Of a stretch of 64,000 nucleotides of DNA, positions 1,921-46,871 are shown in pieces (position 1 is the stretch's first letter; the number at the start of each line of letters is the position of its first letter). Position numbers and translations under genes: made by a program. Below the pieces are notes generated by a model that was not told the origin of the DNA, made no database searches, and was given only the letters and a program-made list of their open reading frames with translations. The DNA is taken from positions 310,001 to 374,000 of IMG/VR virus record IMGVR_UViG_3300024239_000011; one strand, 5' to 3'.

Positions 1921-1949
1921 CCAGGAATGTTTGAGTAGAGGGGTTGCGG

Positions 1950-3284
1950 ATGGTCTATTTTATTAACAAATACGATGGCACACAGGTAGCGGCAATTGCC
2001 GAAGGTGCAATGGACACCACCAGCACTTCATTGAAGTTGCTTGGGAGAAATTTTATCAACTATGGTGAGATCATCTCCGAGAACTTCGTTCATCTGATGG
2101 AGAATTTTGCCAGCCCAAACCCGCCTGCTGGGGTGCCATTATCTGGGCAGTTGTGGTTCAACACTACCGACAACAAAATGTATTTGTTTAATGGTACGAC
2201 TTGGGTTGTCGCCACCGCGATCAACGTGGGTAACACCGATGGTGATCCGAATAATAACGGGGATGGACCAAATGCATTACCACCGTCTGGTACAGCGGAA
2301 GGCGACCTCTATTGGGATGCCGATACGCAGCAGCTTTGGGGTTGGACCGAGATTGGCACCCCGCATTGGGTGTTGATTGGTCCGCCCGCACCGGACAGCG
2401 CAAATTCCAAGCTGGAATATCAGCAGATTGATGGTCATGATTGCCTTGTGATTACCATTGGTGGTCAATACATCGCCATCTGGTCAGCGGTATCGTTCAC
2501 TCCAACCACTGCTCCGTGGAATAGCATTTTCCCGGCTGCCGCTACCGGCGTTGAAGGTATTGTTGCCGGATTAACATTCCGCCGCGATGATATGAATAGT
2601 ATCAGAAGTGGTTCGCATTATCCGAGCAAGAACAATAGTTTCAACCTTGGTTCCGCGTCGTTGCGGTGGGATACACTGCATGCGCGTGTTGTAGTTGCTG
2701 ATAATATCCAGCAAACTGGTCAAGGAAGCATTGCTTTTAATAAATTCATGCGTACCGACCAAACCAATGTCCCCGATGTTAATGTGGCTTACGACCTTGG
2801 AAGCACAACGAATCGGTATTCAAAAGTTTACGCAACCGATTTCATGGGTACTTCCACCGCAACGCGCCTTGCCGACTTGGCAGAACGTTTTGCTGCGGAT
2901 GAGCCGATGGACGAAGGTACCGTTGTCAAGCTCGGGGGTTCCGCTGAAATTACCAAGACGACCGAAGCGGCAGATATCGATGTCCTCGGGGTGGTGTCCA
3001 CTCGTGCGGCATTCAAAATGAATGCCGAAGCTGGTGATGATAACTCCCATCCGTTCGTTGCTTTTGCTGGTCGAGTGCCATGCAAAGTTGTTGGTAAGGT
3101 CGAAAAGGGTGAACGTTTGATTACCTCCAATATTCCTGGGGTTGCTATTGGATTCAAAACAGCGTATCCGGAGATTGCTGGTTTTGGTACAAACCGCCAT
3201 GCGCTGGAAATTATTGGCCGTGCGCTTGAATGCAAAAACACTGACGAGGTGGGTTTGGTTATGATCGTGGTTGGTACGAAATAA
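1950..3284 (+). CDS. Tail fibre / baseplate-associated protein with C-terminal intramolecular-chaperone-like domain
   Basis: N-terminal LLGRNFINYGE..ENFVHLMENFA, repeats GQLWFNT..MYLFNGTTW and GDLYWD..LWGW, C-terminal ADLAERF..GTVV..VLGVVST..AGRVPCKV. Confidence 0.75.
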   Translation: MVYFINKYDGTQVAAIAEGAMDTTSTSLKLLGRNFINYGEIISENFVHLMENFASPNPPAGVPLSGQLWFNTTDNKMYLFNGTTWVVATAINVGNTDGDPNNNGDGPNALPPSGTAEGDLYWDADTQQLWGWTEIGTPHWVLIGPPAPDSANSKLEYQQIDGHDCLVITIGGQYIAIWSAVSFTPTTAPWNSIFPAAATGVEGIVAGLTFRRDDMNSIRSGSHYPSKNNSFNLGSASLRWDTLHARVVVADNIQQTGQGSIAFNKFMRTDQTNVPDVNVAYDLGSTTNRYSKVYATDFMGTSTATRLADLAERFAADEPMDEGTVVKLGGSAEITKTTEAADIDVLGVVSTRAAFKMNAEAGDDNSHPFVAFAGRVPCKVVGKVEKGERLITSNIPGVAIGFKTAYPEIAGFGTNRHALEIIGRALECKNTDEVGLVMIVVGTK

Positions 3285-3340: not shown

Positions 3341-4483
3341 TTGAAGGAAATTGATCTCTATCTCGGTGGCTATTTGCTGTGCTGTGGCGACGTATTCGTT
3401 GACCTCGGTGATAAGCGATATGCTGATGCCGTATCGATACAGCCGCTTGCCGGGCGGTATGGCATCTACAACGTTCATCTGGATTCGAACCAGTTGAGCC
3501 TTATCCCCGAGCTTGAGCAGACCTTCCAGGGCGCTACGGTTCGGTTCTACGTCCGCCTGATTGATGGGAACGTCAATTACGCCCCGGCGCCGAACGTCAC
3601 GTTCTTCACCGATGATCAAGCGATCCTTGAACAGATGAATGCCGCAAACAGTGGACTTAATGTGACGTTCTTGCTCACCCCGGATGTTGCAATACAGCCA
3701 GTTGTTTCCCTGATTGAAACTTCGCAAAACACGATTCGCCTCCAACTGCTAGTGGTGAAGAATGGTACGGCTGTGAAGTGGAACCCAGGTACCCTGGATG
3801 AGGTGTTCTTTCACGTCTTTGATCATGTGGTTCGCACGGGTAATCCGCGTATCGTATTCGATTATCCGAGTATGCGTGGCGCAGAATACCATTGCTGGTT
3901 GGATCAGTATTATTTTGTCAATGGTGATACTGAGATTCAATGTCCACTAGTTGGGCATCTTCGCCCCTATGATTTAAATTATGAGCCACTAACCACCGAA
4001 TGCGCGTTATGTGCATTTAATAGTAAGTGCTTCAACTGTCGATGGGCGAACTATCATAATACCGCATCTTTTGTGAATACTGGATGTCGTGATGTGTCTG
4101 AGTTTTACGACAAATCATTGACTACCGTACACAACGTGCAATTATTTCAAGTGTTCAGTCAGATGTATGATAAATTCCGCGAGCAACCGGAAGAAATGCT
4201 CAAGGTTTATACGTTTCTGATATCGGAGAACCGCCCTGATCAATGGATTTCGGTGCGGGAGGTATTTGGTGAATTGCTCAAGGAAGCAACCACCAAGGAT
4301 TATGCATTTGATTTTATGGTTTCTGTGATCTCGGCATATACCGATCCGCTTGCGGTATTTTCCACGGAAACTGTGCATACCATTGGGCGAAATATGTTTG
4401 AGATTGCCGAACCAAATCTCAATCAGCTTTTAGGATACCTATTCCTTATCGAATACGCGAAGATTTACCACGGGGAAGGTTAA
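3341..4483 (+). CDS. Degenerate radical SAM/SPASM-like protein (no CxxxCxxC)
   Basis: Has a SPASM-like CALCAFNSKCFNC..GC cluster but no N-terminal CxxxCxxC. First gene of the translationally coupled rSAM run. Confidence 0.5.
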   Translation: MKEIDLYLGGYLLCCGDVFVDLGDKRYADAVSIQPLAGRYGIYNVHLDSNQLSLIPELEQTFQGATVRFYVRLIDGNVNYAPAPNVTFFTDDQAILEQMNAANSGLNVTFLLTPDVAIQPVVSLIETSQNTIRLQLLVVKNGTAVKWNPGTLDEVFFHVFDHVVRTGNPRIVFDYPSMRGAEYHCWLDQYYFVNGDTEIQCPLVGHLRPYDLNYEPLTTECALCAFNSKCFNCRWANYHNTASFVNTGCRDVSEFYDKSLTTVHNVQLFQVFSQMYDKFREQPEEMLKVYTFLISENRPDQWISVREVFGELLKEATTKDYAFDFMVSVISAYTDPLAVFSTETVHTIGRNMFEIAEPNLNQLLGYLFLIEYAKIYHGEG

Positions 4484-5703
4484 TGCATAAGATCACCGGG
4501 AAGGTTAAGGGGACGGTCCTGTTCTATGATGAAAGGACCGCGATTCTCTACGACCATGACATGGTTCCGATCACCCAGACCCGTGACTATCAACGGTCTA
4601 AGTTTGGTGGTGCTATTGGTTTGTATAACATCGCCAGCGTGCAGTTTGGGCAATTCTGTAATCTCCGATGCACATACTGCCTGCAACGCACTATAGGAAG
4701 TGTTGATAGCGTTCATACCCCGGAGCGTGGTACGAAAATCCAACAGACGGTTGAGTATATTAGACGTACACTTGATCCGTGTATTCCAACCAAGGTTGAT
4801 TTGTGGGGCGGCGAACCGCTGTTCTATTGGGATGATCTGAAGGAGGTTGTCACCAGCCTGGAACCGCATGGGCAGATGCACTTCACGGTGTTTACCAATG
4901 GTATGGCACTCAAGGAAGAACATCTGGCGTGGTTCGCCAGCCGTCCATCCAAATTCACGGTGTCATTAAGCCATGATGGGTTTGGACAAGCCGCGCGTGG
5001 TAAAGACGTTCTGGACAAAGTGCTTGATTTGTTTGCTCACATAATTGCACCGAATATTGATTATTCAATTGCAACTACTGTGTCAAATACCAACCACGAC
5101 CTTCTTGCGCTGAATGATTTGTTCATGGTAGCACTGGATCGTCATGGGCTGCGGGATAGGGCGAAGTGGATCATTGAAATCCCACTGGTGTTCAGCGCAA
5201 AGGATGCTTTTGACCCCAAGCAGTTGCATAAGTTTACCGAGAACCTTAGGGCGTTCTTAACAGAAAATGAGCGCGGAAACCCACGCATTCTTAACAACAC
5301 CTTATGGTCTACTTTCGATCTGTTCGGTATATTTGCCCTGCTGAATCGTTTCAACAGCAAACATATACCAGGGTTCTACCGGTGCCATTTGTCCTATGAT
5401 AATGCCGTGGTTGTCAACACCAATGGTGAAGTGCTTCTCTGTCCTCATTCAACTTCTCCGACGCATGTGTTGGGGTCGGTTGACGGCGGTCAGGTCAAAC
5501 ACAAATCCGAGGTGATTCGCACCGGATATGATCCGCGTTGCGACGGTTGCCTCGTTCGTGATTTTTGTCGAAGCAGTTGCCCAATCATTGGTGGTACTTT
5601 TGAAGATAATCACAAAGTAATGTGGGCGTACTTCTCGACGTTGTACGAGTTCGCCTTTAAGCGTCTTCTTATGGAAGATGAAGTCGTAATCGAGCGAGTG
5701 TGA
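4483..5703 (+). CDS. Radical SAM / SPASM-domain protein
   Basis: CNLRCTYC, WGGEP, FTNG, SHDG, and C-terminal CDGCLVRDFCRSSCP. Confidence 0.92.
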   Translation: MHKITGKVKGTVLFYDERTAILYDHDMVPITQTRDYQRSKFGGAIGLYNIASVQFGQFCNLRCTYCLQRTIGSVDSVHTPERGTKIQQTVEYIRRTLDPCIPTKVDLWGGEPLFYWDDLKEVVTSLEPHGQMHFTVFTNGMALKEEHLAWFASRPSKFTVSLSHDGFGQAARGKDVLDKVLDLFAHIIAPNIDYSIATTVSNTNHDLLALNDLFMVALDRHGLRDRAKWIIEIPLVFSAKDAFDPKQLHKFTENLRAFLTENERGNPRILNNTLWSTFDLFGIFALLNRFNSKHIPGFYRCHLSYDNAVVVNTNGEVLLCPHSTSPTHVLGSVDGGQVKHKSEVIRTGYDPRCDGCLVRDFCRSSCPIIGGTFEDNHKVMWAYFSTLYEFAFKRLLMEDEVVIERV

Positions 5704-5704
5704 T

Positions 5705-6976
5705 ATGAAATTCAAGATCAGCGCCTTGGATACCCAAGCAACCATCATCTATGACAACGAAGCTAACATCTTTTTTGACGACACGGGAGTGCCGCTCACA
5801 CAAACCGCGAATTACATTCGTAGACGCGCGGCCAATTGGGACAAAACGCCGACGTGGCAAACATCCACTAATATTCGGCAAATCAAAATTTCTCTTGGGC
5901 AGTTCTGCAACTATTCCTGTACCTACTGTATGCAGAGCCAAATCGGTGAAGTGGGTAAGGAAGGTTTTGCGAAGAACGTCAACACCGACCGCATCATCGA
6001 AATCCTCAAGACCAATTACACGGTCCCCGACAACGTTCGCATCGAACTGTGGGGTGGTGAACCATTCTTCTATTGGGAAGATATGGTCAAGCTCATGGAG
6101 GCGTTCGATCATGAAACTGCTGAATTCCAGATTTTCACCAACGGATCAACTTTGCGACGCAAGCACCTTGATTTTTTCAAGGGTTTGAAGAGCCGTAAGA
6201 TCGATCTGGGGCTGTCGCACGACGCAGCCAAACAGGAAACCACCCGTGGTAAAAACTATCTCGCTGAAAACCTTGAACTGCTTCGCGAGTATCGTGAATT
6301 TACGAATATCCAACCTTTCTTGAGTGCCACGTTGACCAACGTGAATTATGATTTGTTGGAAATCAATGACTACTTTCGTGCTATGTTGGAGGCGCACTAC
6401 GGGGATACGAACCTGTGGATCAACTTCGACGTGCCGATGATTCACGAAAAGCAGAGTCTCAAGTTCTCACAAGACCAGCTTGATGGTTATAGCGCCAACT
6501 TGCGCAAGTACCTTCAAGCGTGTTGGGAGGATAAGAATCACGAGCGTATGATCCGTGGTTCGTTTTTTGAAGGCGGACAGCCAAGCTTCAAGCGCATCAT
6601 GGAATCCTTCCATTCCAAGGATATTGAGTCATTCATCAAATGTGCAGTGGGTTCGCCTAATTCGTTGACCCTCGATCTGGAAGGCAATGTTAAAACCTGC
6701 CCACACGCCGGGGATGCACATATATTTGGGAACGTCCTTGAGAGCGAAGACCACATTTTCAAGAATGATCCCACCTATGTGCGCACGGTAGAATACGACC
6801 AGTGTCAAAAGTGCTTGGTGCGCCGCTTCTGCCAAGGCGGTTGCCCTATCGTGATTGATAAAAACACGTGGTACTCGTATCACCATGTTTTGTGGACCCA
6901 CTACAGCACCATGTTCCAACTGGCTATGGAATTGTTGCTAGGTAGCAAAAAAGTGATGATCACAAATGTTGACTGA
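5705..6976 (+). CDS. Radical SAM / SPASM-domain protein
   Basis: CNYSCTYC, WGGEP, FTNG, CQKCLVRRFCQGGCP. Paralog of the preceding gene (shared N-terminal YD..I.D..VP.TQT). Confidence 0.92.
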   Translation: MKFKISALDTQATIIYDNEANIFFDDTGVPLTQTANYIRRRAANWDKTPTWQTSTNIRQIKISLGQFCNYSCTYCMQSQIGEVGKEGFAKNVNTDRIIEILKTNYTVPDNVRIELWGGEPFFYWEDMVKLMEAFDHETAEFQIFTNGSTLRRKHLDFFKGLKSRKIDLGLSHDAAKQETTRGKNYLAENLELLREYREFTNIQPFLSATLTNVNYDLLEINDYFRAMLEAHYGDTNLWINFDVPMIHEKQSLKFSQDQLDGYSANLRKYLQACWEDKNHERMIRGSFFEGGQPSFKRIMESFHSKDIESFIKCAVGSPNSLTLDLEGNVKTCPHAGDAHIFGNVLESEDHIFKNDPTYVRTVEYDQCQKCLVRRFCQGGCPIVIDKNTWYSYHHVLWTHYSTMFQLAMELLLGSKKVMITNVD

Positions 6977-8009
6977 TCTGTGCCGCAACGTCTCTATCAT
7001 CAATTTGTTGCTGACCAAAAAGTGCAACTACTCTTGCTCATATTGTCACCAGCTTCACAAAGACGATGTGCGACTTGCGGTATCACCACCCGAGCGTATC
7101 CACGAAATTGTGGAAAAGCTTGCTACGATCAATGATATCCCGAAGAACGTGCGATTTTTCGGCGGGGAAACGCTACTGCGTTTCCCCGATATCAAAGCCT
7201 ATTTTGAGGCATACCAACCGAACTATCCGGCACTGGGGTTTAGTGTTTATTCGAACGGATCACTCCTAACTCCTGACATGGGCGAATTCCTCGCCAAGAA
7301 CGGCGTAGACCTCACATTATCCATCGATGGGTATACAGAGGACGGTCAGCTTGAAAAGGACTATAAACGCCTAGAAACCGTCTTCCCGGCGATCTATCGC
7401 ATCTACGCCACTCACGGACGTATGATATCGGTGTCGGTGACCATCGACATTGCCAAAGTTCAGGCAGCGAAGAACCTGATGGTGTTGTTTACTCGGCGTT
7501 TTCCACGCACCAAACTTTTCATTTCTCCCGTTTTCCATTCGAAGGGTGATGGGAATACCCCATGGAGCATGGATGCGATTGATGACCTTCTGGGGTTTGT
7601 GGAGACCATCAACCAACAACGGGCAACACCGATCCTACAGGGATTGAATGTGATCTCATCGCCTCAGAAATGTATTAGCGTGGATTGGACATTGGCAGTG
7701 GACCTGTCGGGCGATCTGTCCAGTTGCTTCTTCACGATCACCGACAAGCTGACCTTCCCCGAGTACGTCTATGGGAACCTGTTGGACGACCGATTTGACG
7801 CGCCCCAATATGCTGCGATCTTGGAGCGGAAGCGTCAGATGTTCGACAACCCGTATTGCGCGGCATGCAGGTTCAAAGAAACCTGCATATCTTGCTCGAC
7901 GTGCGGGATGCTGTTCAACGAGAACCGGTGGTTCGAAAACGGCGAATGCAAGCCCTTGGTACATTTCTTGTCTGGGATGCATCACATGACCAGGGATGAA
8001 CCACTATGA
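6966..8009 (+). CDS. Radical SAM / SPASM-domain protein
   Basis: CNYSCSYC, FGGET, SNG, SIDG, CAACRFKETCISCSTC. Confidence 0.9.
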   Translation: MLTDLCRNVSIINLLLTKKCNYSCSYCHQLHKDDVRLAVSPPERIHEIVEKLATINDIPKNVRFFGGETLLRFPDIKAYFEAYQPNYPALGFSVYSNGSLLTPDMGEFLAKNGVDLTLSIDGYTEDGQLEKDYKRLETVFPAIYRIYATHGRMISVSVTIDIAKVQAAKNLMVLFTRRFPRTKLFISPVFHSKGDGNTPWSMDAIDDLLGFVETINQQRATPILQGLNVISSPQKCISVDWTLAVDLSGDLSSCFFTITDKLTFPEYVYGNLLDDRFDAPQYAAILERKRQMFDNPYCAACRFKETCISCSTCGMLFNENRWFENGECKPLVHFLSGMHHMTRDEPL

Positions 8010-9511
8010 ATGAAATTACCACTCTGCTGCGTAGCCGTGGGGTCTTTCAAGTGGTACTCACCAATCGCTGCAACTACAATTGCAACTACTGCTATCAGGA
8101 ACGCAATTTTAAGAAGTTCCCGAACGAGTTCGATAGCGCCGAGCAACTTGATCGTGTTTGCGGTAAATTGGTCGAACACCGCAAGGACGACACCCACTTC
8201 GAGTTCCAATTTCTCGGCGGCGAACCGCTGTTGAAGAAAAATGTTTTAATGAATTTTATGCGGGATTATGCATGGAAATATCCCAAGGTAGTATTCAACG
8301 TAATCACCAATGGTAAACTTCTCGATCACGAAACGGCAGTAGAGTATATCACGAGTCACCCTCTGGCGAAAATCTATTTTTCCTGTGACGGTATTGACCT
8401 GAATACCAATACGCATCCCAAGACCTGGGAACGTATTGCGATACTGTATGACCGGCTCTATCAACGCTTCCCAGAGCGCATTGGCATCATCCCGGTACTA
8501 ACCAGCAGTACCATCCCTAATTACGTTGCCCTATTGGATTTGATGGCGGAAAAATATCCACTCAGTCATGTTCATGCATTGGCCGCAATCAGCGACCATT
8601 TCGATACCAACTTCGAATGGTCGCCCGAGCATATTCGCAGCGTCGGGGAACAAATCCGTCCGTTCTTCCTGAAACACCCAGGTTGGACCATTGACTATTA
8701 CATGTGGGATTATCCGCTCGATTCCTTCCTCGATTCGGCGGACGACCCGGCGGTGATGCCAAACGGTGACATACATCTGATGCCATCGTATTTTATGGGT
8801 GAAGCAGCAGACCTAAGCAATAAACCAGACTTCAATGTAATCACCGGGGAAGTATACCCGTACCTTGCCCAGAAACAGATCAAAGAGCGGTTGATTCAAG
8901 CGGCGAAAACTGCCAACTCGCGCTGTCAGACATGCCCGATTTCGGGGCATTGTCTTCCGATGAAATTCTTCACATTGGTACACTTACCGGACGAGCAAAT
9001 TACCGCAGAGACCGTGGTTGATGCAGAATGTAACACCATGCTTGATTTCTTCTGGAATATGCCGGTGTTCGCACATTTTCCCACCGGCATATTTCAGAAC
9101 CTTCAACAGCAAGTCCAACTGTTCCAGAAGTATCGGACACGATATGTTCGGGCGCTTTATGTTTTAGACCGTTTGGCTATTCCAGTTCTGCAACTTCTAA
9201 ATGACGATTTTGTTGAGAATATCGAAAAACTTGGCGTTGGAAAATATTTCTATCTAGATATGTATGGGGTTTCCCGCCATACCGAAGAAGTGCGCTCCGC
9301 ATATAATACTCCATTGCGGGATATTTTTTGTCATTTCAAGCATCATCCGAAACGTCGTCCACTTCACCCGGCATTGGTATGTAAAGTTGTTCGTGAATTG
9401 TTGGATAAACCGACCGACCATTTGTTTGAGTTAATTATTCCGAACCTTTACCACAAGGTCTATTATGGTCCAACGTGGCATTGGTCGTTTGACGACACTT
9501 ATAGGTGGTAA
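8006..9511 (+). CDS. Radical SAM protein with partial SPASM and C-terminal extension
   Basis: CNYNCNYC, LGGEP, ITNG, SCDG, CQTCPISGHC. Confidence 0.9.
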   Translation: MNEITTLLRSRGVFQVVLTNRCNYNCNYCYQERNFKKFPNEFDSAEQLDRVCGKLVEHRKDDTHFEFQFLGGEPLLKKNVLMNFMRDYAWKYPKVVFNVITNGKLLDHETAVEYITSHPLAKIYFSCDGIDLNTNTHPKTWERIAILYDRLYQRFPERIGIIPVLTSSTIPNYVALLDLMAEKYPLSHVHALAAISDHFDTNFEWSPEHIRSVGEQIRPFFLKHPGWTIDYYMWDYPLDSFLDSADDPAVMPNGDIHLMPSYFMGEAADLSNKPDFNVITGEVYPYLAQKQIKERLIQAAKTANSRCQTCPISGHCLPMKFFTLVHLPDEQITAETVVDAECNTMLDFFWNMPVFAHFPTGIFQNLQQQVQLFQKYRTRYVRALYVLDRLAIPVLQLLNDDFVENIEKLGVGKYFYLDMYGVSRHTEEVRSAYNTPLRDIFCHFKHHPKRRPLHPALVCKVVRELLDKPTDHLFELIIPNLYHKVYYGPTWHWSFDDTYRW

Positions 9512-10890
9512 TCATGGACAACCCTTTCAGTCAGGTCTATTGGATCAATCTGCTCCTGACTAATAAATGTAACAAGCAGTGTTCGTACTGCTATGAGCAG
9601 CATAAAGCCGAGTTTGAACGGTCGTACATCAATGCACATCGTGTGGATGAAATCTGCGCGAAGATGGACACCATGAACTCGCTTCAGAAAACCCTCCATT
9701 TTTTTGGCGGCGAACCCATGCTGAAGTTCGACACCATCATGGAGTACATGCGGGCATCGTCCCATAAATACCCCACATTGTCTTACGTGATTATCACCAA
9801 CGGCACGCTACTGACTCCTCAGAAATTCGAGGATTTCGTTTCGCACGGCGGCTCATTCTACATTTCCTGCGACGGCTGGGGGATCGATAACACTGACATC
9901 ACAACCAAGGATTTCAGTGCTATCAAGGATGTGGTTGAGGCATGCTTCCCGGTGGTCGCAGCCTATGATAAACGCATTACGTTCGACGTAGTTGTGCATC
10001 CCCGTGAGGTCGCGTCGTTCGGGCGGTTTATGCAGTACCTCGCCGGAAGTCCGCATTTCGAGCAAATCAATATCCACATCAAGCCATTGCTATACAGCAT
10101 GACCGATGGGTTGGTGCGCTGGGATGACGCAGCGATTAATCAATTCTTACAGGAATGTATGAATGCCATTGTGAAATCAAAGGGCATCAATTTCGAGATA
10201 GAAGGGTTCTACGAGAAGTCATGGGGCACGTGCATGACCATGGCAAACAACCTGAATGTTGATGTTGAGGGTAATTTTTCAGGGTGTTATTTTCTACTGA
10301 ACCAACATAAAGCCACCTCGGCATTCGATGATGCCATTTTTGGCAACATTCTAACCGGCGAGATTGATACTGCCAAAATCGCCAACTTTAAACGCCTGGA
10401 ACAGGAACTCTACCAGTCCTCTAAATGCCAATCTTGCGTATTGAACCCAAAATGCTTCCAGTGCAGTGCTGGACTGTACACAACCCTTGGAAAGTGGTAC
10501 GACAACGACAAGCATTGCGAAATCGTTATCCCATTCATCCAACGGTTGAATTCCTTCCAAGCCATGAAAGAGGATGCATATATCATTGGCTGCCTGAAGG
10601 AGAAAATCCAGGAACATGGGTCTGAGTGGTTTGTGACTCGCCTTAAGTATTGGACGACAGTTCACATGCAAGCGACGTTGCTGGAAATTTGTAATGCACA
10701 TATCCCAGCACAAAACATTATGGCGGGAAATGCGCCACTTGATTTGGGTCAGTGGCTCAGTGATGCGGGGGCAAAGCAAGTAGCAGAGCTTCATCACATT
10801 TTCACGCCTGCATTGGCTGATCTTTCTGCTCAAGATCAGTTTACGCTTTGCGTTGCGCGTGTGATTGAGAAAGAACATCCCAAAACCTAA
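9505..10890 (+). CDS. Radical SAM / SPASM-domain protein with C-terminal extension
   Basis: CNKQCSYC, FGGEP, ITNG, SCDG, CQSCVLNPKCFQC. Confidence 0.92.
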   Translation: MVIMDNPFSQVYWINLLLTNKCNKQCSYCYEQHKAEFERSYINAHRVDEICAKMDTMNSLQKTLHFFGGEPMLKFDTIMEYMRASSHKYPTLSYVIITNGTLLTPQKFEDFVSHGGSFYISCDGWGIDNTDITTKDFSAIKDVVEACFPVVAAYDKRITFDVVVHPREVASFGRFMQYLAGSPHFEQINIHIKPLLYSMTDGLVRWDDAAINQFLQECMNAIVKSKGINFEIEGFYEKSWGTCMTMANNLNVDVEGNFSGCYFLLNQHKATSAFDDAIFGNILTGEIDTAKIANFKRLEQELYQSSKCQSCVLNPKCFQCSAGLYTTLGKWYDNDKHCEIVIPFIQRLNSFQAMKEDAYIIGCLKEKIQEHGSEWFVTRLKYWTTVHMQATLLEICNAHIPAQNIMAGNAPLDLGQWLSDAGAKQVAELHHIFTPALADLSAQDQFTLCVARVIEKEHPKT

Positions 10891-10898: not shown

Positions 10899-10935
10899 CC
10901 TCCATGGACTGCTAAATACGTGCAGTCCATGGAGG
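10899..10935 (+). promoter_or_regulatory. Late promoter inside an RBS-sequestering hairpin
   Basis: Perfect 14-bp inverted repeat cctccatggactgc / gcagtccatggagg. TAAATA is in the loop and the GGAGG RBS is in the 3' arm. Confidence 0.75.
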
Positions 10936-10941
10936 TGCTTG

Positions 10942-11805
10942 ATGGTGGTAACGGTAATCAGCGGCGGTGATAATTCATCCAGCTATGCAAAAGACAAAGC
11001 TTTTGATAATTCGATAACGACATCCTGGCGAAGCTTACAGACCGGCGTTGATGTTGTAAATGCCGCATGGCTCGGTCAAGATTTCGGTATTCCAGTTTAC
11101 GTGATTTCTGCGAGCTACCGTAAAGGGTCATACGATCCGGCATCGGTTGCGATACAGTACAGTGATGATGGATTGTCATGGACGAATACTGGTGTAACGT
11201 TTACCAGTTTTAGCAACGCGGTGGAAAAGAAAAGTATAGCAGTGGGTACACCGCATCGTTACTGGCGTGCAATTGCCACAGGTGCCACGGCAGGTACCAA
11301 CCCATGGGAAATTGTAGAATTGACTTTCGGCATCGCCACAACAGGATTACCCAAGTACATAACGAAGGTAGTGTCTCTTGGCGCAATAACCAATTTGAAC
11401 GCAACGGCATTGAAGGCACGGGTGAATACGTTGAAGACAAAGTTTGTTCAGAACGGCATTCTCACGGCAGTAGATATGCAGGAATTTTGGAGCATTCTTC
11501 GGGATTTCAGCCAACACTACCACCCATACACGGAAACGAAGCAGGCGATTGATAATATTCAGGCTGGTATTGATGCTATTACCGATTCAACAACAAAGAC
11601 CAATGCCCAGAACGCCGCAAACCCTCATAAGGTAACCGTTTTGAGTAACACCGGTCCTATATTATTTGACAATCCGATCACATCTGGGTTTTCTGTGGGG
11701 TTTGTATTGGATAAAGTGACAATGAATACGTTTATTGAAATGATAAATGCATCCCAACGTCATAAACATAGTGTAACTGATCGTTTTTTTGACACAGCAG
11801 TCTAA
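10942..11805 (+). CDS. Discoidin (F5/8 type C)-like domain protein with two HxH fibre-like modules; probable virion protein
   Basis: KAFD..TSW..WLGQDFG..IQYSDDG..W..HRYWR..WEIVEL, then QHYHPYTE and RHKHSVTD. Preceded by a late promoter. Confidence 0.65.
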   Translation: MVVTVISGGDNSSSYAKDKAFDNSITTSWRSLQTGVDVVNAAWLGQDFGIPVYVISASYRKGSYDPASVAIQYSDDGLSWTNTGVTFTSFSNAVEKKSIAVGTPHRYWRAIATGATAGTNPWEIVELTFGIATTGLPKYITKVVSLGAITNLNATALKARVNTLKTKFVQNGILTAVDMQEFWSILRDFSQHYHPYTETKQAIDNIQAGIDAITDSTTKTNAQNAANPHKVTVLSNTGPILFDNPITSGFSVGFVLDKVTMNTFIEMINASQRHKHSVTDRFFDTAV

Positions 11806-11816
11806 GGAAGTCCGAT

Positions 11817-12200
11817 ATGGCTGAACAAAATGTTCCTTCGAATACCGATGCAGCAACGTATTCGACCACAGCAGCGGAAACCCCGCAAATCACCGCACCG
11901 CAAATACTGACGGCCAACATGTTCCAAAACATGTTGAATGTGCTGGAAAATGCTCTCGGTAGCCATACCCATACGCATCAAGATACCGCATTGAATGCGT
12001 GTACGTGTTGGAACTATACACCGTGTGACCGTTTAGTGACCAACCTTACCTGTGTTGATTGTTCGCCTGGAAATTGTGCTGGGCAGTGCCGCACGTGTGG
12101 TACCGCGCAATGTGGGACTTATGAGTGTGCCTGTGCTGATGTTCAGGGATGGGTTGATAATACTCCTGGGGGTAACGGGACACCCTGCACACTGCCTTGA
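11817..12200 (+). CDS. Cys-rich protein, putative radical SAM substrate (HxH leader plus 12-Cys core)
   Basis: Cys-free N-terminal half ending SHTHTHQD, then 12 Cys in about 66 aa. Adjacent to six rSAM-like genes. Confidence 0.65.
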   Translation: MAEQNVPSNTDAATYSTTAAETPQITAPQILTANMFQNMLNVLENALGSHTHTHQDTALNACTCWNYTPCDRLVTNLTCVDCSPGNCAGQCRTCGTAQCGTYECACADVQGWVDNTPGGNGTPCTLP

Positions 12201-13788: not shown

Positions 13789-14172
13789 ATGGTCAATTTT
13801 GATATGCGCATTCTGGTAGTCGATGACTATGCTACGATGCAGAAGATTGAGCGCAATTTGCTCAAGCAGATTGGTTTCGGGAATGTTGATACCGCAAATG
13901 ACGGCTCCCAGGCACTTCAAATGCTTCGGTTGCAGCACTATGATCTTATCCTGTCCGATTGGAACATGGAGCCGATGACCGGTCTGATGTTGTTGCGCGA
14001 AGTGCGCAATGACCCTGCCCTGAAGCATATCCCATTCATCATGGTAACTGCGGAAACTAAACAGGAAAATGTGATCGCTGCTCGGGAAGCAGGGGTGTCC
14101 AACTATATAATTAAACCCTTTACGGCGGATACATTAAAGAAGAAACTACAGTCGGTTATCGGGGATTTCTAA
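13789..14172 (+). CDS. cheY: Chemotaxis response regulator CheY
   Basis: Single receiver domain: ILVVDD, phosphoacceptor in SDWNMEPM, MVTAE, YIIKPF. GAGG RBS. Confidence 0.92.
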   Translation: MVNFDMRILVVDDYATMQKIERNLLKQIGFGNVDTANDGSQALQMLRLQHYDLILSDWNMEPMTGLMLLREVRNDPALKHIPFIMVTAETKQENVIAAREAGVSNYIIKPFTADTLKKKLQSVIGDF

Positions 14173-24035: not shown

Positions 24036-24875
24036 ATGACCTCAATTTTTACCATTGATGTTGAGCGCATACAAATACAAAAGTACAGATTAACACAACA
24101 TCCGTTACTCCATGGTAATTATTACCTACGGACGATTGATGATTTGCGACTGTTCATGGAACACCATGTATGGTGTGTGTGGGACTTTATGAGCTTGTTA
24201 AAGACATTACAGGTAAATGTTGCACCTTCCTGTAATATATGGACACCAAAACGCAATATACCAAGTGAAGCTGTTCGGTTAATAAACGAAATCGTTTTGT
24301 GTGAAGAAAGTGACATTACTCCGGTTGAAAACCAGTACATGAGCCATTTCGATTTGTATTTGACTGCCATGCGTGAAATTGGTGCTAATTATACTCACGT
24401 ATTGACTTTTACTAAACGGCTCCACGAGCATCTGGAAAATAATAATTTTGATGAAAATACATGGAAGACTTTTCACGAATCTAATCCAGATATAATTTCA
24501 ACAATCCCGCCTGCTGCGTTGCGCTTTGTGACAAATACCATGAAGTGGTGTTTAGTGCCACATCACGCAGCCGCAGCTTTTTGCTATGGACGCGAAACAA
24601 TTATTCCAGCCATGTTTCAGAATTTGCTTCGGCAATTGAATATTGGGAGTCACAAGGCTCCATTTTTTCATTTTTATCTTGAGCGTCATATTCAAGTAGA
24701 TGGTGAAGAACACGGAAATGCCGCCGAACGACTTATTACAATTTTGTGCGGTAATGATCCTCACAAAATACTTGAAGCAGAGAAAATTGCATTAGATGCA
24801 ATAGAAACTCGTTTTCAATTATGGTCAGATGTAGAAAAATTATTGATAAAAAATATTCGTCAAACCGTACTATGA
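24036..24875 (+). CDS. DUF3050-family heme-oxygenase-like protein
   Basis: FMEHHVWCVWDFMSLLK, INEIVLCEESD, SHFDLY, GRETIIP, YLERHIQVDGEEHG. Confidence 0.85.
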   Translation: MTSIFTIDVERIQIQKYRLTQHPLLHGNYYLRTIDDLRLFMEHHVWCVWDFMSLLKTLQVNVAPSCNIWTPKRNIPSEAVRLINEIVLCEESDITPVENQYMSHFDLYLTAMREIGANYTHVLTFTKRLHEHLENNNFDENTWKTFHESNPDIISTIPPAALRFVTNTMKWCLVPHHAAAAFCYGRETIIPAMFQNLLRQLNIGSHKAPFFHFYLERHIQVDGEEHGNAAERLITILCGNDPHKILEAEKIALDAIETRFQLWSDVEKLLIKNIRQTVL

Positions 24876-35849: not shown

Positions 35850-37175
35850 GTGTGTAATGTGAATACGCCCGAACTTCTAGCCAAAGCACTTGAATCGCTA
35901 CAGGATGGTGTGATCGTCACCGACGCTTCGCAAACCATAGTGTTCGTCAACGATTCGGTGTTGGCACAGACTGGGTACACCAGGGAGGAAGTGGTTGGAC
36001 AAACCCCCAAACTCTTCCAGTGTCATCAAACAACGGATACCTTTAAAAATTCAATACGCGCTACCCTTGCGCGTGGCGATTCCTTTATTGGGACGACGGT
36101 GAACCGTCGTAAAGACGGTACCACGTATCATGTTGAATTATATGTTGCTCCGATCCACGGGGAGGGTGGGATAACTCATTACGTTGGTACTCAACGCGAT
36201 ATTATCCGCCGAGGCGGAAGACATTTTGAATCATTTTTTGATGTATCCACCCACCTTCTAATTATCCTTGATGTGGATGGTACTCGTATCCGCATAAACA
36301 CCATTAATGCATTGGCAGAGAAATACCTTAATCCAGAATGGTGTACCTGCCGTGGTTTGGATATTTCGTTTCAATGCGCTGGGTTGGAGGAATTCGTCAT
36401 CCATGCCAAATTATGCACGGAGACGTGTGAGGTAACTCGCTTTGAGCAGGTTATCAATACCAATCAGGGTGAGCGCGTTGTTGAGTTCACGTTAGTCCCG
36501 GTAGTTGATGGTAATGGTGTATGTGTCGGTTTGAATTGCGTTGGTGAGGATATCACCAGCGAAAAAGAGGCTTTGGAACATATTCATTTCTTGGCCTACC
36601 ATGACAGCCTTACCGAACTTCCAAACCGCGTCCTCATGACGCAACGCATGAATGCTGAGATTGAACGTTCTCGGCGTTTTGGGCACCCGTTTGCGTTGCT
36701 GTTTCTTGATCTTGATAATTTCAAACAGGTCAACGACACGATGGGTCATGGGGTTGGTGATAAACTTCTCAAAAAGGTTGCGAAGCGTCTTTCTAGTGCT
36801 GTACGCAAGAATGATCTGGTGGCACGATTAGGTGGTGATGAATTCGCTGTCATCATGACAACGGACGGAGATGCTTTAGCTGATGCGGAAACGTTGGCGA
36901 CCCGAATCATTGCCGCATTATCACTACCGTTCGAGGTTGATGAACACCGGATCGATAATATCGGCGTGAGTGTTGGGGTTGCACTATTCCCCAATCATGC
37001 AACTTCGAGAGACGAGTTATTTCGCAACGCCGACATAGCGATGTATCACGCTAAACGCACACACGGAAATTGTCATACCGTTTTTGTAGATGTATTTGGT
37101 GGGTGTAAAAAAGATTGCGAACACTGTGATCTAAAAGTTCGATGCTTCGGAGATAGCTTCGTTCTCACCCCGTAA
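35850..37175 (+). CDS. PAS-PAS-GGDEF diguanylate cyclase
   Basis: PAS motifs (TGYTREEVVGQTP, NRRKDG); HDSLTELPNR, DLDNFKQVNDTMGH, RKND I-site, RLGGDEF. Confidence 0.95.
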   Translation: MCNVNTPELLAKALESLQDGVIVTDASQTIVFVNDSVLAQTGYTREEVVGQTPKLFQCHQTTDTFKNSIRATLARGDSFIGTTVNRRKDGTTYHVELYVAPIHGEGGITHYVGTQRDIIRRGGRHFESFFDVSTHLLIILDVDGTRIRINTINALAEKYLNPEWCTCRGLDISFQCAGLEEFVIHAKLCTETCEVTRFEQVINTNQGERVVEFTLVPVVDGNGVCVGLNCVGEDITSEKEALEHIHFLAYHDSLTELPNRVLMTQRMNAEIERSRRFGHPFALLFLDLDNFKQVNDTMGHGVGDKLLKKVAKRLSSAVRKNDLVARLGGDEFAVIMTTDGDALADAETLATRIIAALSLPFEVDEHRIDNIGVSVGVALFPNHATSRDELFRNADIAMYHAKRTHGNCHTVFVDVFGGCKKDCEHCDLKVRCFGDSFVLTP

Positions 37176-44263: not shown

Positions 44264-46681
44264 TTACGCCTCTGCCATCTTCTGGATGGTCGCATAGTCG
44301 GTCTTGCCGGTGCCCAGCAACGGGATGGCATCGACCACCTTGATCACCGCCGGAACCGACAGGGCACTGATGCCCTTACTCTTGGCATCTTCCGCCAAGG
44401 CAGCGCGGTTCGCATCCGGATTGGTCGTGAAGAGGACCAACTGTTCGCCCTTCTTCTCGTCCTTGATAGCGACCACGGCGTGCTGGTGTTGTACCCACAG
44501 CGCCGATACCTGGGTTTCGACGGCGGTCAACGACACCATTTCGCCCGCGATCTTGGCGAACCGCTTGGCACGCCCGCGAATGGTGATGAAACCCTGATCG
44601 TCCAGGCTCACCATGTCGCCGGTATCATACCAGCCATCCTCGGGCTGCTGGATGACGCCGGGGTTGTCCGCCTTGAGATAACCCAGCATGACGTTCGGAC
44701 CCCGGACGATCAGGCGGAAAGCATCCTCGACGCCGGGCACCGTGACCAACTTGTAGTCGATCAGGGGCATCAGGCGCCCAACAGTCCCGGAGCGATAGTG
44801 CATCGGGGTGTTGGTGGCGATGACAGGGGCGCATTCGGTCGCGCCGTAGCCCTCGTAGATCGCCCGCTGGAACTTCTCCATGTAGAGCGCGCGAGTGCTG
44901 TCCTTGACCTTCTCAGCGCCCGCAAAGATGTAGCGGATGCTGCGGAAATCATAGGGGTGCGCTTGCTTGGCGTAGCCGTTCAGGAACGTGTCCGTACCAA
45001 ACATGATGGTCACGTTGCGGTCATAGACCAGTTCCGGGATGACTTTGTAGTTCAAAGGGTTCGGGAACAGGAACACCTTGATGCCATTCAGGAACGGCAA
45101 TAGCGTGCCCGCCGTCAGACCAAAGCTGTGGAACATGGGCAGAGCGTTCAGTACGATGTCCTGCGGCGAGAAATCGACCGAGGCAGCCAACTGGTACATG
45201 TTGGATAGCAGGTTCTTGTGCGACAGTACGACGCCCTTCGGGACGCCCTCCGACCCACTGGTGAAAATCACAACCGCCGGGGTATGCGCGGTCAGGTCTT
45301 CGCTGTCATGCAGACTATACGGGGGACGTGTTGCATCATAGTGAATCGCACGGGCATCGGTATAGTCCAAGAATTTACCACGCAACTTGGCGATCAGCCC
45401 GATATTAGCACCGATATCTTCGAGGTAGACCACGTTGACGCCATTCAGTGAATCGTTCTCACCGTTTTCCAACCCCTTGATCACGTCCTGAAGCTTCGCC
45501 TGTTCAACGAAGAACCGGCTGGTGATCACGGTCTTGATCTCCGCTGCTCGGATTGACGCCTGAATATTGCGCAACCCGGTACTGAAATTCAACATGGCGG
45601 GCACACGACCGAACGCCTGAAGGGCAAAGAACGTTACGGCAGTCTTGATGCTGTTGGGCAGCAAAACACCGATAAATTCACCCTGGTTGGTAAACTGGCT
45701 CAATTGACGACCTAGAACCAGTGTCCCCACAATGAAATTCTTGTAGGTTATCGCGGTGATTTCCTTGGTCGTAGGGTCGATGTTTTCCGCAATCACGGTC
45801 TTTTCGCCGTAGGATGCCGATGCATCAAGCAAACCTTCATACAACGTTTGATCAGCACGATCAGTGGCAGCCATCATGGCAACCATTTCATCGTACAGCC
45901 AATTACCAATGGCAATGCGGCGGGTTTTGCCACGCATCGGTACATGACCCGTACCATCACACCGCTCGCATAGGCGACGGTTGTCACCCGGATACAAACC
46001 AGATGCAAAAATGATATCACCGTCGCCATCGCATACAGGGCATTGCTGCTGCCCGATATTGACCTTACGGGGCGGAAGCATGGTCATTTCGAACGGATGC
46101 CCATAATGTACTGGGTTCCGCCCGCGCAGCCGCGACAATGGCGTGAAATGGACACCTTCCAGACGGATGGGGACAATGTTGGCATCCGCTTTATCCGCGA
46201 TCATACCGGGACCGTCGTAAACCTTCATCAGACCATTGGTGACAGTCAATCGTCCCTCTGGAAAAATCACAACCGGCTTGCCGTCCTTAACCAGATTGAC
46301 GAGCGCCTTGATCGCCATTGGGTTGCGTGTGTCGAGGGTCACACAGTTGAAAAACGGCATAACCAATTGCATCCACCACCACTTCGACGCACCAAGATTA
46401 ACGGCGAACGTCGGGTTCCCCGGAATGTAGGTGGCGAGGATGGCAGCATCCACGAAGCTGACATGATTGGCGATATAGATGACGCGATCCCCGGCGAGTT
46501 TGGCGTTTTCCAGCCCCTTCACCGTGATGTTGTTGTGCAGAGCAAAGACAATACGCAAACCCAGACGAACAAAAGGACCGCCGATTTTCTTCAGCACGGC
46601 AAACCACATGTCGATCATACACCGCAACATGTGGTCGATCATCCAGTTATAGACAGTGTTTTTAATCTCACGATCAGTCAT
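44264..46681 (-). CDS. aas: Bifunctional acyltransferase / acyl-ACP synthetase (Aas-like)
   Basis: PlsC motifs ANHVSFVD and IFPEGR; AMP-binding FTSGSEGVPKG, YEGYGATE, WYDTGD, GKTDY. Confidence 0.92.
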   Translation of the reverse strand: MTDREIKNTVYNWMIDHMLRCMIDMWFAVLKKIGGPFVRLGLRIVFALHNNITVKGLENAKLAGDRVIYIANHVSFVDAAILATYIPGNPTFAVNLGASKWWWMQLVMPFFNCVTLDTRNPMAIKALVNLVKDGKPVVIFPEGRLTVTNGLMKVYDGPGMIADKADANIVPIRLEGVHFTPLSRLRGRNPVHYGHPFEMTMLPPRKVNIGQQQCPVCDGDGDIIFASGLYPGDNRRLCERCDGTGHVPMRGKTRRIAIGNWLYDEMVAMMAATDRADQTLYEGLLDASASYGEKTVIAENIDPTTKEITAITYKNFIVGTLVLGRQLSQFTNQGEFIGVLLPNSIKTAVTFFALQAFGRVPAMLNFSTGLRNIQASIRAAEIKTVITSRFFVEQAKLQDVIKGLENGENDSLNGVNVVYLEDIGANIGLIAKLRGKFLDYTDARAIHYDATRPPYSLHDSEDLTAHTPAVVIFTSGSEGVPKGVVLSHKNLLSNMYQLAASVDFSPQDIVLNALPMFHSFGLTAGTLLPFLNGIKVFLFPNPLNYKVIPELVYDRNVTIMFGTDTFLNGYAKQAHPYDFRSIRYIFAGAEKVKDSTRALYMEKFQRAIYEGYGATECAPVIATNTPMHYRSGTVGRLMPLIDYKLVTVPGVEDAFRLIVRGPNVMLGYLKADNPGVIQQPEDGWYDTGDMVSLDDQGFITIRGRAKRFAKIAGEMVSLTAVETQVSALWVQHQHAVVAIKDEKKGEQLVLFTTNPDANRAALAEDAKSKGISALSVPAVIKVVDAIPLLGTGKTDYATIQKMAEA

Positions 46682-46871
46682 GAAGGCAATCCTGCGGCAG
46701 GTTAAGAGGTGAGTTTTAACGAACACCATCCCAACTAGCAAGACCTTAAATATGGCTTTTGCACTTGTTCCTATGGTAAATAAGGTTCGCCGCTGATGCT
46801 CAAACCACACCATAGGCAGGGCATGGTGGCACCCTCACAACCTCCAAACTACACCAAGCAGGAGAGAGTTT

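What the first reader, a model, noticed from the sequence alone, without database searches (positions are those of the whole stretch)
11450..11990. A helix-HxH module repeated three times links the discoidin protein to the leader of the Cys-rich protein
Seen: GILTAVDMQEFWSILRDFSQHYHPYTE and FVLDKVTMNTFIEMINASQRHKHSVTD in 10942-11805, and QILTANMFQNMLNVLENALGSHTHTHQD in 11817-12200, give a consensus (I/V)L..(M/F)...(L/I)....HxH...(D/E). Established: HxH motifs coordinate metal at the three-fold axis of trimeric T4 fibres (gp12, gp37). Inference: the precursor 'leader' is a fibre trimerisation or attachment module that is retained rather than cleaved, and it may also be the rSAM recognition site.
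Basis: partly seen in the sequence, partly recalled or inferred. Interest (0 to 1): 0.62.

Follow-up and report, generated by a model that had tools for sequence, protein, structure and literature searches.

The report
Conserved jumbo-phage His-clasp module beside rSAMs
The three helix-HxH stretches are real copies of a conserved module that defines two uncharacterised jumbo-phage protein families, always encoded together next to tail-fibre genes and radical-SAM peptide maturases, so the 'leader' of the Cys-rich protein is most likely a retained assembly piece rather than a throw-away leader.

Summary
The window lies in a 543-kb virus genome. The discoidin protein (10942-11805) ends in a two-module 'family A' domain. 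The Cys-rich protein (11817-12200) is a 'family B' protein: one module followed by a Cys ladder, here lengthened by 53 residues.

Profiles built only from other phages recover both proteins (E 1e-13 and 3e-9) and nothing else in the genome. The two His and an Asp/Glu four residues later are invariant or nearly so across 129 A and 102 B members.

- In all 46 loci found through B alone, and in 14 found through the rSAMs, A, B and rSAM/SPASM genes occur together.
- In 34 of the 46 loci they lie near homologues of the window's fibre-like gene.
- Single chains with three modules exist in nature.
- A carries variable extra domains: discoidin, beta-propeller, Hint.
- An A+B complex prediction gave weak support only (0.38 against 0.01 for the best control).

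Best reading, which is inference: two modules from A and one from B form a pseudo-threefold core. Its six His form a fibre-like metal site, and this core tethers the lectin-like domain to a Cys tail that the rSAMs cross-link. Homotrimer formation, metal binding and the chemistry are untested. No relative in Pfam, NCBIfam or the PDB, and no paper describing such a system, was found.

The parts
1944..3284 (+). Tail-fibre-like protein (446 aa) upstream of the cassette
   Evidence: PHROG tail fiber and virion structural hits. Homologues lie within 10 kb of the A/B/rSAM cassette in 34 of 46 loci, often directly upstream of A.
4483..6976 (+). Two rSAM/SPASM genes (4483-5703 and 5705-6976), paralogues of the RP12 gp079 type
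   Evidence: Pfam and PHROG radical SAM hits. Best blastp match is RP12 gp079 (3e-34 and 1e-59). NCBIfam hits to peptide maturases are all far below cut-off.
6966..10890 (+). Three rSAM/SPASM genes (6966-8009, 8006-9511, 9505-10890), paralogues of the RP12 gp076 type
   Evidence: Pfam Radical_SAM, Fer4_12 and SPASM. Best blastp match is RP12 gp076. PapB-like is the best NCBIfam match, at 49-81 bits against a cut-off of 340.
10942..11805 (+). Discoidin-family A fusion protein (287 aa from the ATG; P0001 is numbered from the TTG at 10939)
10972..11319 (+). F5/8 type C (discoidin)-like domain, residues 12-127
   Evidence: PF00754, E 7.6e-6, 26.5 bits, just under the gathering score of 28.2. Homologues that cover only this part carry PF00754.
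11401..11442 (+). N-terminal helix of the family A part (residues 155-168)
   Evidence: AF2 model helix 6-19 of P0001:150-288, block pLDDT 87-97. It aligns with the conserved first helix of family A.
11449..11541 (+). Module 1: helix + HYH + E at +4 (residues 171-201)
   Evidence: AF2 helix 28-42.
11695..11787 (+). Module 2: helix + HKH + D at +4 (residues 253-283)
   Evidence: AF2 helix 110-124.
11817..12200 (+). Family B protein with a long Cys-rich tail (127 aa, 12 Cys; P0002)
   Evidence: AAGGAAG lies 8 nt before the ATG.
11898..11990 (+). Module 3: helix + HTHTH + D at +4 (residues 28-58)
   Evidence: 27.9 bits to the B-type module profile.
12000..12032 (+). Stretch equivalent to the family B Cys ladder (C62, C64, C70, R72)
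   Evidence: Aligns with the CxCxCxCxCxR ladder. The invariant columns C62, C64 and R72 are kept. The closest variant is the B protein of locus L005.
12039..12197 (+). Extra 53-residue Cys-rich extension, absent from canonical family B (9 more Cys)
   Evidence: Only one near-identical relative was found (98% identical).
24036..24875 (+). DUF3050 protein, homologue of RP12 gp080, which flanks the cassette in 19 of 46 loci
   Evidence: Family profile E 2.9e-89. PF11251 E 1.9e-69. Count.

Best explanation
The helix-HxH stretch is a conserved unit of about 31 residues, roughly ITAxDxNxL(x9-10)HxHxxxD. It defines two uncharacterised protein families, seen almost only in phage and metagenome contigs up to about 380 kb. 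Family A has an N-terminal helix and two modules and mostly no Cys. Family B has one module followed by an alternating Cys ladder ending in RG.

The window's discoidin protein is a discoidin domain fused to a family A domain. The Cys-rich protein is a family B member with a longer Cys tail.

A and B are always encoded together, beside three or more SPASM-type radical-SAM enzymes and usually beside fibre-like genes.

Proposed mechanism (inference):
- The modules are retained structural parts.
- The two modules of A and the one of B pack into a pseudo-threefold alpha/beta core.
- At the helix ends, six His (and three Asp/Glu) line the axis and probably hold a metal ion, as HxH sites do in homotrimeric phage fibres.
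- This clasp joins the sugar-binding discoidin domain to the Cys tail of B.
- The rSAMs cross-link that tail, most plausibly by Cys thioethers. The module may also present B to them.

Shown: homology, conservation, gene linkage, fusions. Inferred: the heteromer, the metal, the chemistry, a place in the virion.
For: Family membership:
- P0001:150-288 aligns end to end with family A, and P0002:1-74 with family B.
- Profiles built without window sequences give E 1.1e-13 and 3.3e-9.

Conservation:
- Both HxH and the Asp at +4 of the second module are invariant in 129 family A members; the Asp after the first is nearly so.
- H, H, D, two Cys and R are invariant in 102 family B members.
- 125 of 128 short A proteins have exactly two HxH.

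Linkage:
- All 14 loci found through the rSAMs that carry A or B carry both. 66 loci with more distant rSAMs carry neither.
- All 46 loci found through B alone carry A and rSAMs.
- Fibre-like homologues lie nearby in 34 of the 46 loci.

Retained structural role:
- A is fused to a discoidin domain (this window), a beta-domain (P0256) and Hint domains, and can hold a beta-propeller inserted between its two modules.
- Module 2 of A is followed by only about 5 residues.
- Natural single chains carry three modules (P0261, P0281). P0281 has no Cys ladder (one stray Cys at its N-terminus) and no rSAM gene on record in 10 kb upstream.

Models:
- AF2 of P0281: pTM 0.70, four confident helices, a short strand after each HxH.
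- Its best natural fold matches are BARA domains, which I recall (not checked here) as a pseudo-threefold beta-alpha repeat fold: Z 7.3 (rmsd 4.1, 125 aligned) and Z 6.9 (rmsd 3.9, 122 aligned). This is within the tool's noise range.
- Complex prediction of the A part with the B leader plus Zn gave weak support: score 0.38 against a best control of 0.01. The mark was reached by 58 of 80 solved complexes and 2 of 110 mismatched pairs, but at 0.60 or under by only 7 of those 80 and by both mismatches. Runs agree in at least 22% of contacts, and the partner's pLDDT is at least 43.

Other:
- HxH at the threefold axis binds Fe in gp37, the R-pyocin fibres and P2 gpV, with Zn seen in gp12 (PMC6116203).
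- The rSAMs resemble peptide-modifying SPASM enzymes: PapB, anSME, QhpD, HxsB.
Against: - The complex prediction is only weak support. By the tool's own calibration, a pass at this level is more often wrong than right unless the pairing was already likely. The partner's fold was uncertain.
- I could not see model coordinates, so clustering of the His residues was not checked.
- No fold or sequence link to real fibre HxH domains was found.
- One locus (L132) has two A genes and one B, so the 2+1 count is not universal.
- The monomer model of A already has three helices, so B's helix could be a fourth rather than a third.
- Family A and the neighbouring fibre-like proteins were not among the 32 virion proteins detected in phage RP31, though that survey was shallow.
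- The window's cassette lacks the gp075-, gp077- and gp078-type genes of the canonical cassette, so it may work differently.
Confidence: 0.45

Rival explanations
1. Homotrimeric fibre module. Each protein forms its own homotrimer. Each module helix makes a short three-stranded coiled coil capped by a His6 metal site on the true threefold axis, as in gp37, gp12 and the R-pyocin fibres. A would then have two such sites in series and B one.
For: - HxH sites in known fibres are built this way (PMC6116203).
- The cassette sits among fibre-like genes.
- The fibre-like RP12 gp073 has a helix-like stretch ending in HTH next to NPH repeats.
- The module's hydrophobic positions follow a 3-4 spacing.
- Locus L132, with two A genes and one B, fits independent homotrimers.
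Against: - AF2 gives compact monomer models (pTM 0.65 and 0.70), not extended ones.
- Three-module single chains exist.
- Domains of up to about 270 residues inserted between modules 1 and 2 (P0199, P0262) suggest the two modules meet in space.
- A and B co-occur without exception.
- There is no sequence or fold match to fibre HxH domains.
- The module profile does not hit the long fibre ORFs of the loci.
- Homotrimers were not modelled.
Confidence: 0.2
2. RiPP-type leader. The module is mainly the recognition sequence for the rSAM enzymes. A and B are both substrates, or A is a decoy or chaperone. The modifications fall in or just after the HxH and aromatic stretch and on the Cys ladder, and the leader part is later removed.
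For: - The link to rSAM/SPASM enzymes of the peptide-maturase kind is strict.
- B is short (64-79 aa), with a variable N-terminus, a conserved helix and a Cys-rich C-terminus, like many precursors.
- Several paralogous rSAMs suggest several modification steps.
- The invariant HxH and conserved aromatic residues after it (FYDDY in B, Y.D.Y in A) could be cross-link sites.
Against: - No PqqD/RRE domain was found in the five rSAMs at E up to 0.1.
- No protease or exporter was recognised in the cassette.
- Module 2 of A has almost no sequence after it.
- The module sits C-terminal to a folded discoidin domain in this window, and N-terminal to Hint and beta-sandwich domains elsewhere.
- The three-module protein P0281 has no Cys ladder and no rSAM gene on record nearby.
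Confidence: 0.22
3. Chance resemblance of three amphipathic helices that happen to end in HxH.
For: Within the window alone the pairwise similarity is modest (p about 0.001-0.014).
Against: Profiles built from other phages only give E 1e-13 and 3e-9. The key columns are invariant across more than 200 relatives.
Confidence: 0.01

Closest known systems
HxH metal sites of homotrimeric phage fibres and spikes (T4 gp37, T4 gp12, R1/R2 pyocin fibres, P2 gpV)
   Same: An HxH motif in a phage gene set that lies among fibre genes. There are three copies per presumed unit, which would give six His as in the octahedral Fe/Zn sites (PMC6116203).
   Different: There is no sequence or fold similarity. Here the three copies are spread over two different chains (2+1), or sit in one chain, instead of three identical chains. 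Each HxH follows an alpha-helix and is followed by an invariant Asp/Glu at +4. Metal binding is untested.
Ralstonia phage RP12 gp074 (UniProt A0A1L7N0Q6) and the unannotated small ORF after it (NC_041911.1, about 82888-83082); the same pair is in RP31
   Same: These are the only copies of families A and B found in deposited phage records. The neighbourhood is the same: fibre-like genes and rSAMs gp076-gp079.
   Different: In RP12, A stands alone (125 aa) and B is 65 aa with a five-Cys ladder. The window's A is fused to a discoidin domain. Its B has 12 Cys and a 53-residue extension. The window also has five rSAMs of two types and lacks gp075-, gp077- and gp078-like genes.
Ranthipeptide/SCIFF-type systems and QhpC/QhpD (SPASM rSAM enzymes that make Cys thioether cross-links; in QhpC the product stays a protein subunit)
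   Same: SPASM-type rSAMs lie next to a small Cys-rich substrate in which Cys alternates with Asp, Glu, Asn or Gln. The best NCBIfam similarities are to PapB, QhpD, anSME and HxsB.
   Different: All scores are far below the family cut-offs. No RRE domain was found. The alternating CxCxC ladder is not a described target. The system is in phages and has a second, Cys-free partner protein that shares the leader-like module.
BARA domain of Beclin 1 / Vps30 (by my recollection, a pseudo-threefold beta-alpha repeat fold)
   Same: These are the best natural fold matches of the AF2 model of a three-module chain: Z 7.3 (rmsd 4.1, 125 aligned) and Z 6.9 (rmsd 3.9, 122 aligned). The shared feature would be three helix-plus-strand repeats around a pseudo-threefold axis.
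   Different: The Z values lie within the range the tool calls common for unrelated models. There is no sequence similarity or functional link. This is a hint about shape only.

Membership tests
Family A (defined here: jumbo-phage two-module protein, RP12 gp074-like) | An N-terminal helix, then two helix-HxHxxxD modules separated by a variable linker | tested here: met
   P0001:150-288 aligns over its full length. H44, H46, H126, H128 and D132 are invariant in 129 members. The outside-only profile gives E 1.1e-13.
Family B (defined here: one module plus Cys ladder) | One helix-HxHxxxD module followed by a CxCxCxCxCxRG ladder at the C-terminus, about 65-80 aa in all | tested here: inconclusive
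   The module, D56, C62, C64 and R72 are kept, and the outside-only profile gives E 3.3e-9. However, FYDDY is replaced, two ladder Cys and the Gly are missing, and a 53-residue Cys-rich extension follows. I rate it a divergent member.
Family A/B cassette | A and B are encoded together next to SPASM-type rSAM genes | tested here: met
   The window has five rSAM genes, then A, then B. The same linkage holds in 46 of 46 loci found through B.
Family A/B cassette | The canonical accessory genes are present (gp075-like, gp077-type, gp078-type) | tested here: not met
   Family profiles find no gp075-like or gp078-like gene in the 543-kb genome. The five window rSAMs match gp076 or gp079 best, not gp077.
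Trimeric fibre HxH metal site (gp37, gp12, R-pyocin type) | An HxH motif is present | tested here: met
Trimeric fibre HxH metal site (gp37, gp12, R-pyocin type) | Sequence or fold homology to the fibre domains that carry the site | tested here: not met
   No fibre family among the Pfam hits at E up to 10. No solved relative by sequence or profile. No fold match by Foldseek or VIA-align.
Trimeric fibre HxH metal site (gp37, gp12, R-pyocin type) | A homotrimer with the six His on the threefold axis holding Fe or Zn | not testable with these tools
RiPP precursor with rSAM maturase | A small precursor gene next to rSAM/SPASM maturases | tested here: met
RiPP precursor with rSAM maturase | A leader-binding RRE (PqqD-like) domain in a maturase or partner | tested here: not met
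   The five rSAMs hit only Radical_SAM and Fer4_12, with one also hitting SPASM, at E up to 0.1.
RiPP precursor with rSAM maturase | Leader removal by a protease and export of the product | tested here: inconclusive
   No peptidase or transporter was recognised among the cassette genes. Several neighbours have no known family.
PapB-family ranthipeptide maturases | A score above the NCBIfam cut-off (340 bits) | tested here: not met
   Best scores are 49-81 bits.
F5/8 type C (discoidin) domain | A score above the Pfam gathering threshold (28.2 bits) | tested here: inconclusive
   26.5 bits, E 7.6e-6, covering 119 of 127 profile positions. Three homologues of this part carry PF00754.

The most novel reading that the evidence does not exclude
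Jumbo phages build a fibre-associated adaptor from two different small proteins. Their three shared helix-HxHxxxD modules form a heteromeric pseudo-trimeric His6 metal clasp. The same module serves as a retained 'leader' that delivers the Cys ladder of one partner to a set of radical-SAM enzymes. If so, a virion or host-recognition component would be matured by RiPP-type cross-linking, which no paper I found describes.
Probability: 0.25. Interest if true: 0.85.

Novelty: new variant of a known kind. Interest (0 to 1): 0.68.

Why it matters
The module turns out to mark a widespread but unnamed cassette. There are at least 434 family B clusters at 90% identity and 276 family A clusters at 50% identity, nearly all from phage or metagenome contigs. 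In RP12 and RP31, the only deposited phages found to carry it, the B gene is not even annotated.

The cassette ties peptide-modifying radical-SAM enzymes to genes that sit among tail-fibre genes and carry lectin-like domains. If the model holds, it would show three things:
- how a trimer-type metal site can be rebuilt from unlike chains;
- that a RiPP-style leader can be a permanent structural part;
- that phages use radical chemistry to harden or tune a host-recognition part.

RP12 and RP31 are cultured phages that infect Ralstonia, so the question is directly testable.

Tried and rejected
- Word-index protein searches with the whole proteins found only the discoidin part and one near-identical copy of the Cys-rich protein. 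The families appeared only after the RP12 locus was read.
- blastn and tblastn of the region or the C-terminal half against deposited phages gave nothing useful.
- Searches of Pfam, PHROGs and NCBIfam, and of PDB sequences and profiles, with the A part and the B leader gave no family.
- Fold searches of both AF2 models gave no clear match. Only RP12 gp074 itself matched in BFVD, plus weak BARA-like rows.
- The ESM Atlas search returned only unnamed viral clusters for A, with a weak lead to a Cxxx-repeat rSAM target family, and nothing for P0002.
- Alignment A7 put the B sequences on module 1 of the three-module protein instead of module 3, so I did not use it for folding.
- A -1 frameshift that would fuse the two window genes is ruled out. 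The T7 run at 11784-11790 is followed at once by TGA in the downstream frame.
- The RP31 virion proteome lists no cassette protein, but it holds only 32 proteins from gel bands, so it does not decide the matter.
- Complex prediction gave only weak support (0.38 against a best control of 0.01). I cite it as weak, not as proof.
- I found no paper on such a system in four literature searches.
- Sequencing runs: only DNA runs of one subsurface/soil study hold the region, so there is no expression evidence.
Full report
**What is in the window**

The window is part of a 543-kb single-contig virus record (48.7% GC, 66 tRNA genes) from a subsurface metagenome. Between 1 and 12200 the + strand carries, in order:
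- a virion structural protein and a tail-fibre-like protein (1944-3284);
- a 380-aa protein of unknown family;
- five radical-SAM/SPASM genes (4483-10890);
- the discoidin protein (10942-11805);
- 12 nt further on, behind a good ribosome-binding site, the 127-aa Cys-rich protein (11817-12200).

**The observation**

The three stretches are present as described. Anchored on the first His, they share:
- hydrophobic positions with a helical spacing;
- an Ala or Thr near -16;
- HxH;
- an acidic residue four places after the second His.

A loose pattern scan of all ORFs of the 543-kb genome finds the motif as a family only in these two genes. Within the window alone the pairwise similarity is modest: 5, 5 and 70 of 5000 shuffles reach the observed scores. 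The window by itself therefore gives a hint, not a proof.

**Relatives**

Whole-protein word searches found relatives only for the discoidin half, plus one 98%-identical copy of the Cys-rich protein.

The break came from the nearest phage relatives of the rSAMs, Ralstonia phages RP12 and RP31. In RP12, just upstream of the rSAM genes gp076-gp079, two genes stand out:
- gp074 (125 aa, no Cys) has two helix-HxH modules;
- an unannotated ORF after it has one module followed by a CxCxCxC tail.

A small profile of five modules then found the same pair in every one of 13 metagenomic loci whose rSAMs are close to the window's. It found none in 66 loci with more distant rSAMs.

I call the two-module protein family A and the one-module protein family B.

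**The window proteins belong to these families**

- P0001:150-288 aligns end to end with family A: an N-terminal helix, module 1, a variable linker, module 2, then the chain ends.
- P0002:1-74 aligns with family B. Its ACTCW...C.R stretch matches the Cys ladder, most like the variant in locus L005. A further 53 Cys-rich residues follow.
- Profiles built without any window sequence give E 1.1e-13 and 3.3e-9 among 7034 ORFs, and nothing else in the genome scores.
- Position-specific module profiles place module 1 with A-position 1 and module 3 with the B type. Module 2 scores about equally with both A positions.

**Size and conservation of the families**

- The word search with a B alignment returned 434 clusters. 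All are 'hypothetical', none has a Pfam domain, and some lie on contigs up to 312 kb.
- The exhaustive profile search with A returned 276 representatives at 50% identity among 1.84 billion proteins.
- In 129 A members both HxH, one Gly and the Asp at +4 of module 2 are invariant, and the Asp after module 1 nearly so.
- In 102 B members H, H, D, two Cys and Arg are invariant. The canonical tail reads HxHIFYDDYxT(V/A)CxCxCxCxCxRG and ends two residues later.
- Among deposited phage genomes only RP12 and RP31 carry B. Among 185,579 species genomes only one MAG contig does.

**Linkage**

To avoid bias from having found loci through the rSAMs, I searched IMG/VR with B alone. All 46 loci have A, B and rSAMs. 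38 have three rSAMs, and nearly all the rest (one locus has four) are cut short by contig ends.

The canonical cassette also holds:
- a gp075-like protein of about 300 aa (about 44 of 46 loci);
- gp077-type, gp078-type and gp079-type genes (39-42 loci);
- often a DUF3050 protein (19 loci).

Homologues of the window's fibre-like protein lie within 10 kb in 34 of 46 loci, commonly right before A or after the rSAMs.

The window's version is a variant:
- two gp079-type and three gp076-type rSAMs;
- no gp075-like or gp078-like gene, and none of its five rSAMs is of the gp077 type;
- a DUF3050 gene 12 kb downstream, at 24036-24875.

**What the module is likely to be**

Several facts argue that it is a retained structural element and not just a disposable leader.
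- In A, the second module ends the protein, with about five residues after the HxH.
- A is fused to folded domains in many ways:
  - N-terminal discoidin (this window) or a beta-domain (P0256);
  - C-terminal Hint domains or beta-rich domains;
  - a beta-propeller or Gly-rich domain inserted between modules 1 and 2.
- Two natural proteins (P0261, P0281) carry three modules in one chain, the third being of the B type but with no Cys ladder. P0281 has no rSAM gene on record in 10 kb upstream.
- The usual count of two modules in A and one in B, together with these fusions, suggests that three modules make one unit.

AlphaFold2 models point the same way.
- The A part of the window protein: pLDDT 74.7, pTM 0.65.
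- P0281: pLDDT 73.6, pTM 0.70.
- Both give confident helices for each module. In P0281 a short strand follows each HxH.
- The P0281 model's best natural fold matches are BARA domains, which I recall (not checked here) as a pseudo-threefold beta-alpha repeat fold. The Z values (7.3 with rmsd 4.1 over 125 residues; 6.9 with rmsd 3.9 over 122) are within the tool's stated noise range. Foldseek finds nothing.

The one complex job (A part plus B leader plus Zn) gave weak support:
- score 0.38 against 0.01 for the best control;
- the mark was reached by 58 of 80 solved complexes and 2 of 110 mismatched pairs;
- at 0.60 or under, only 7 of those 80 solved complexes passed, as did both mismatches;
- the runs agree in at least 22% of contacts, and the partner's pLDDT is at least 43.

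**Metal**

Three HxH on a threefold axis bind Fe in T4 gp37, the R-pyocin fibres and P2 gpV, with Zn seen in gp12. This is stated in PMC6116203.

The invariant His pairs and the acidic residue here fit a metal site. There is, however, no homology to those fibre domains, and no test of metal binding was possible.

**The rSAMs**

All five resemble peptide-modifying SPASM enzymes over most of their length: PapB ranthipeptide maturase, anaerobic sulfatase maturase, QhpD and HxsB. None reaches a family cut-off.

Cys alternating with Glu, Gln, Asn or Asp in B is a plausible thioether substrate. This is inference by analogy with ranthipeptides and QhpC. The window's B has 12 Cys and the window has five rSAMs, against five Cys and three or four rSAMs in the canonical cassette. 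That fits the idea but proves nothing.

**Verdict**

- The specific picture of a T4-like homotrimeric fibre module is not supported by any test here. A heteromeric 2+1 arrangement fits the data better.
- Metal binding, stoichiometry, the chemistry and a place in the virion remain open. RP31 virion proteomics did not list these proteins, but it was shallow.
- I found no paper describing this cassette.

Noticed in passing
window 10899-10935: A perfect 14-bp hairpin lies between the last rSAM gene and the discoidin gene (-28.8 kcal/mol, z -5.3 against shuffles). Its 3' arm contains the GGAGG ribosome-binding site (10931-10935) of the discoidin gene, whose ATG is at 10942. No T-run follows. It may control translation of the A/B pair or stabilise the RNA.
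   Followed up: partly
L001:7760-7954 (NC_041911.1, about 82888-83082); the same place in RP31 (AP017925.1 79693-79821): The family B gene of Ralstonia phages RP12 and RP31 is not annotated in the deposited records. tblastn reports no feature under the match.
   Followed up: yes
window 24036-24875: A DUF3050 protein is a strong homologue of RP12 gp080, which the RP12 paper calls MgoB-like. gp080 flanks the cassette in 19 of 46 loci, but here its homologue sits 12 kb away.
   Followed up: partly
proteins P0176, P0218, P0225, P0243 (family A with C-terminal extensions): Several family A proteins end in a Hint (intein/hedgehog-type) autoprocessing domain that begins with Cys-Phe-Pro/Arg. This suggests that some A proteins cleave themselves or ligate to something at their C-terminus.
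   Followed up: partly
L132:113-6752: One metagenomic locus has two A genes (one with an N-terminal beta-domain, as in the window's layout), then B, a gp075-like gene and an rSAM. All of these are preceded by three fatty-acid-desaturase-like genes and an Asp/Arg hydroxylase-like gene.
   Followed up: no
window 3341-4483: A 380-aa protein of no known family lies between the fibre-like gene and the first rSAM. It has a Cys cluster (CxxC...CxxC) near residue 220. It is not related to the gp075- or gp078-type genes of the canonical cassette.
   Followed up: partly
window 13789-14172, 35850-37175, 44264-46813 (-), 56894-58156: The virus genome carries bacterial-type signalling and membrane genes: a CheY-like receiver, a PAS-GGDEF diguanylate cyclase, an acyltransferase/AMP-binding fusion and a Na+/H+ exchanger.
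   Followed up: no
G000:C1:77583-159462 (outside the window): ARAGORN finds 66 tRNA genes in the genome; the 55 printed all lie on the - strand within about 80 kb. One call has a four-base anticodon (ctta) at 96422-96505.
   Followed up: no
PDB 9k09 chain D (a portal protein), residues about 404-479: The family A profile's best PDB hit is weak and non-significant (E 0.13). It is a stretch reading VTAAEIQAVRDA...NRLSNIHRHIED, which looks like the module. This is probably chance.
   Followed up: no
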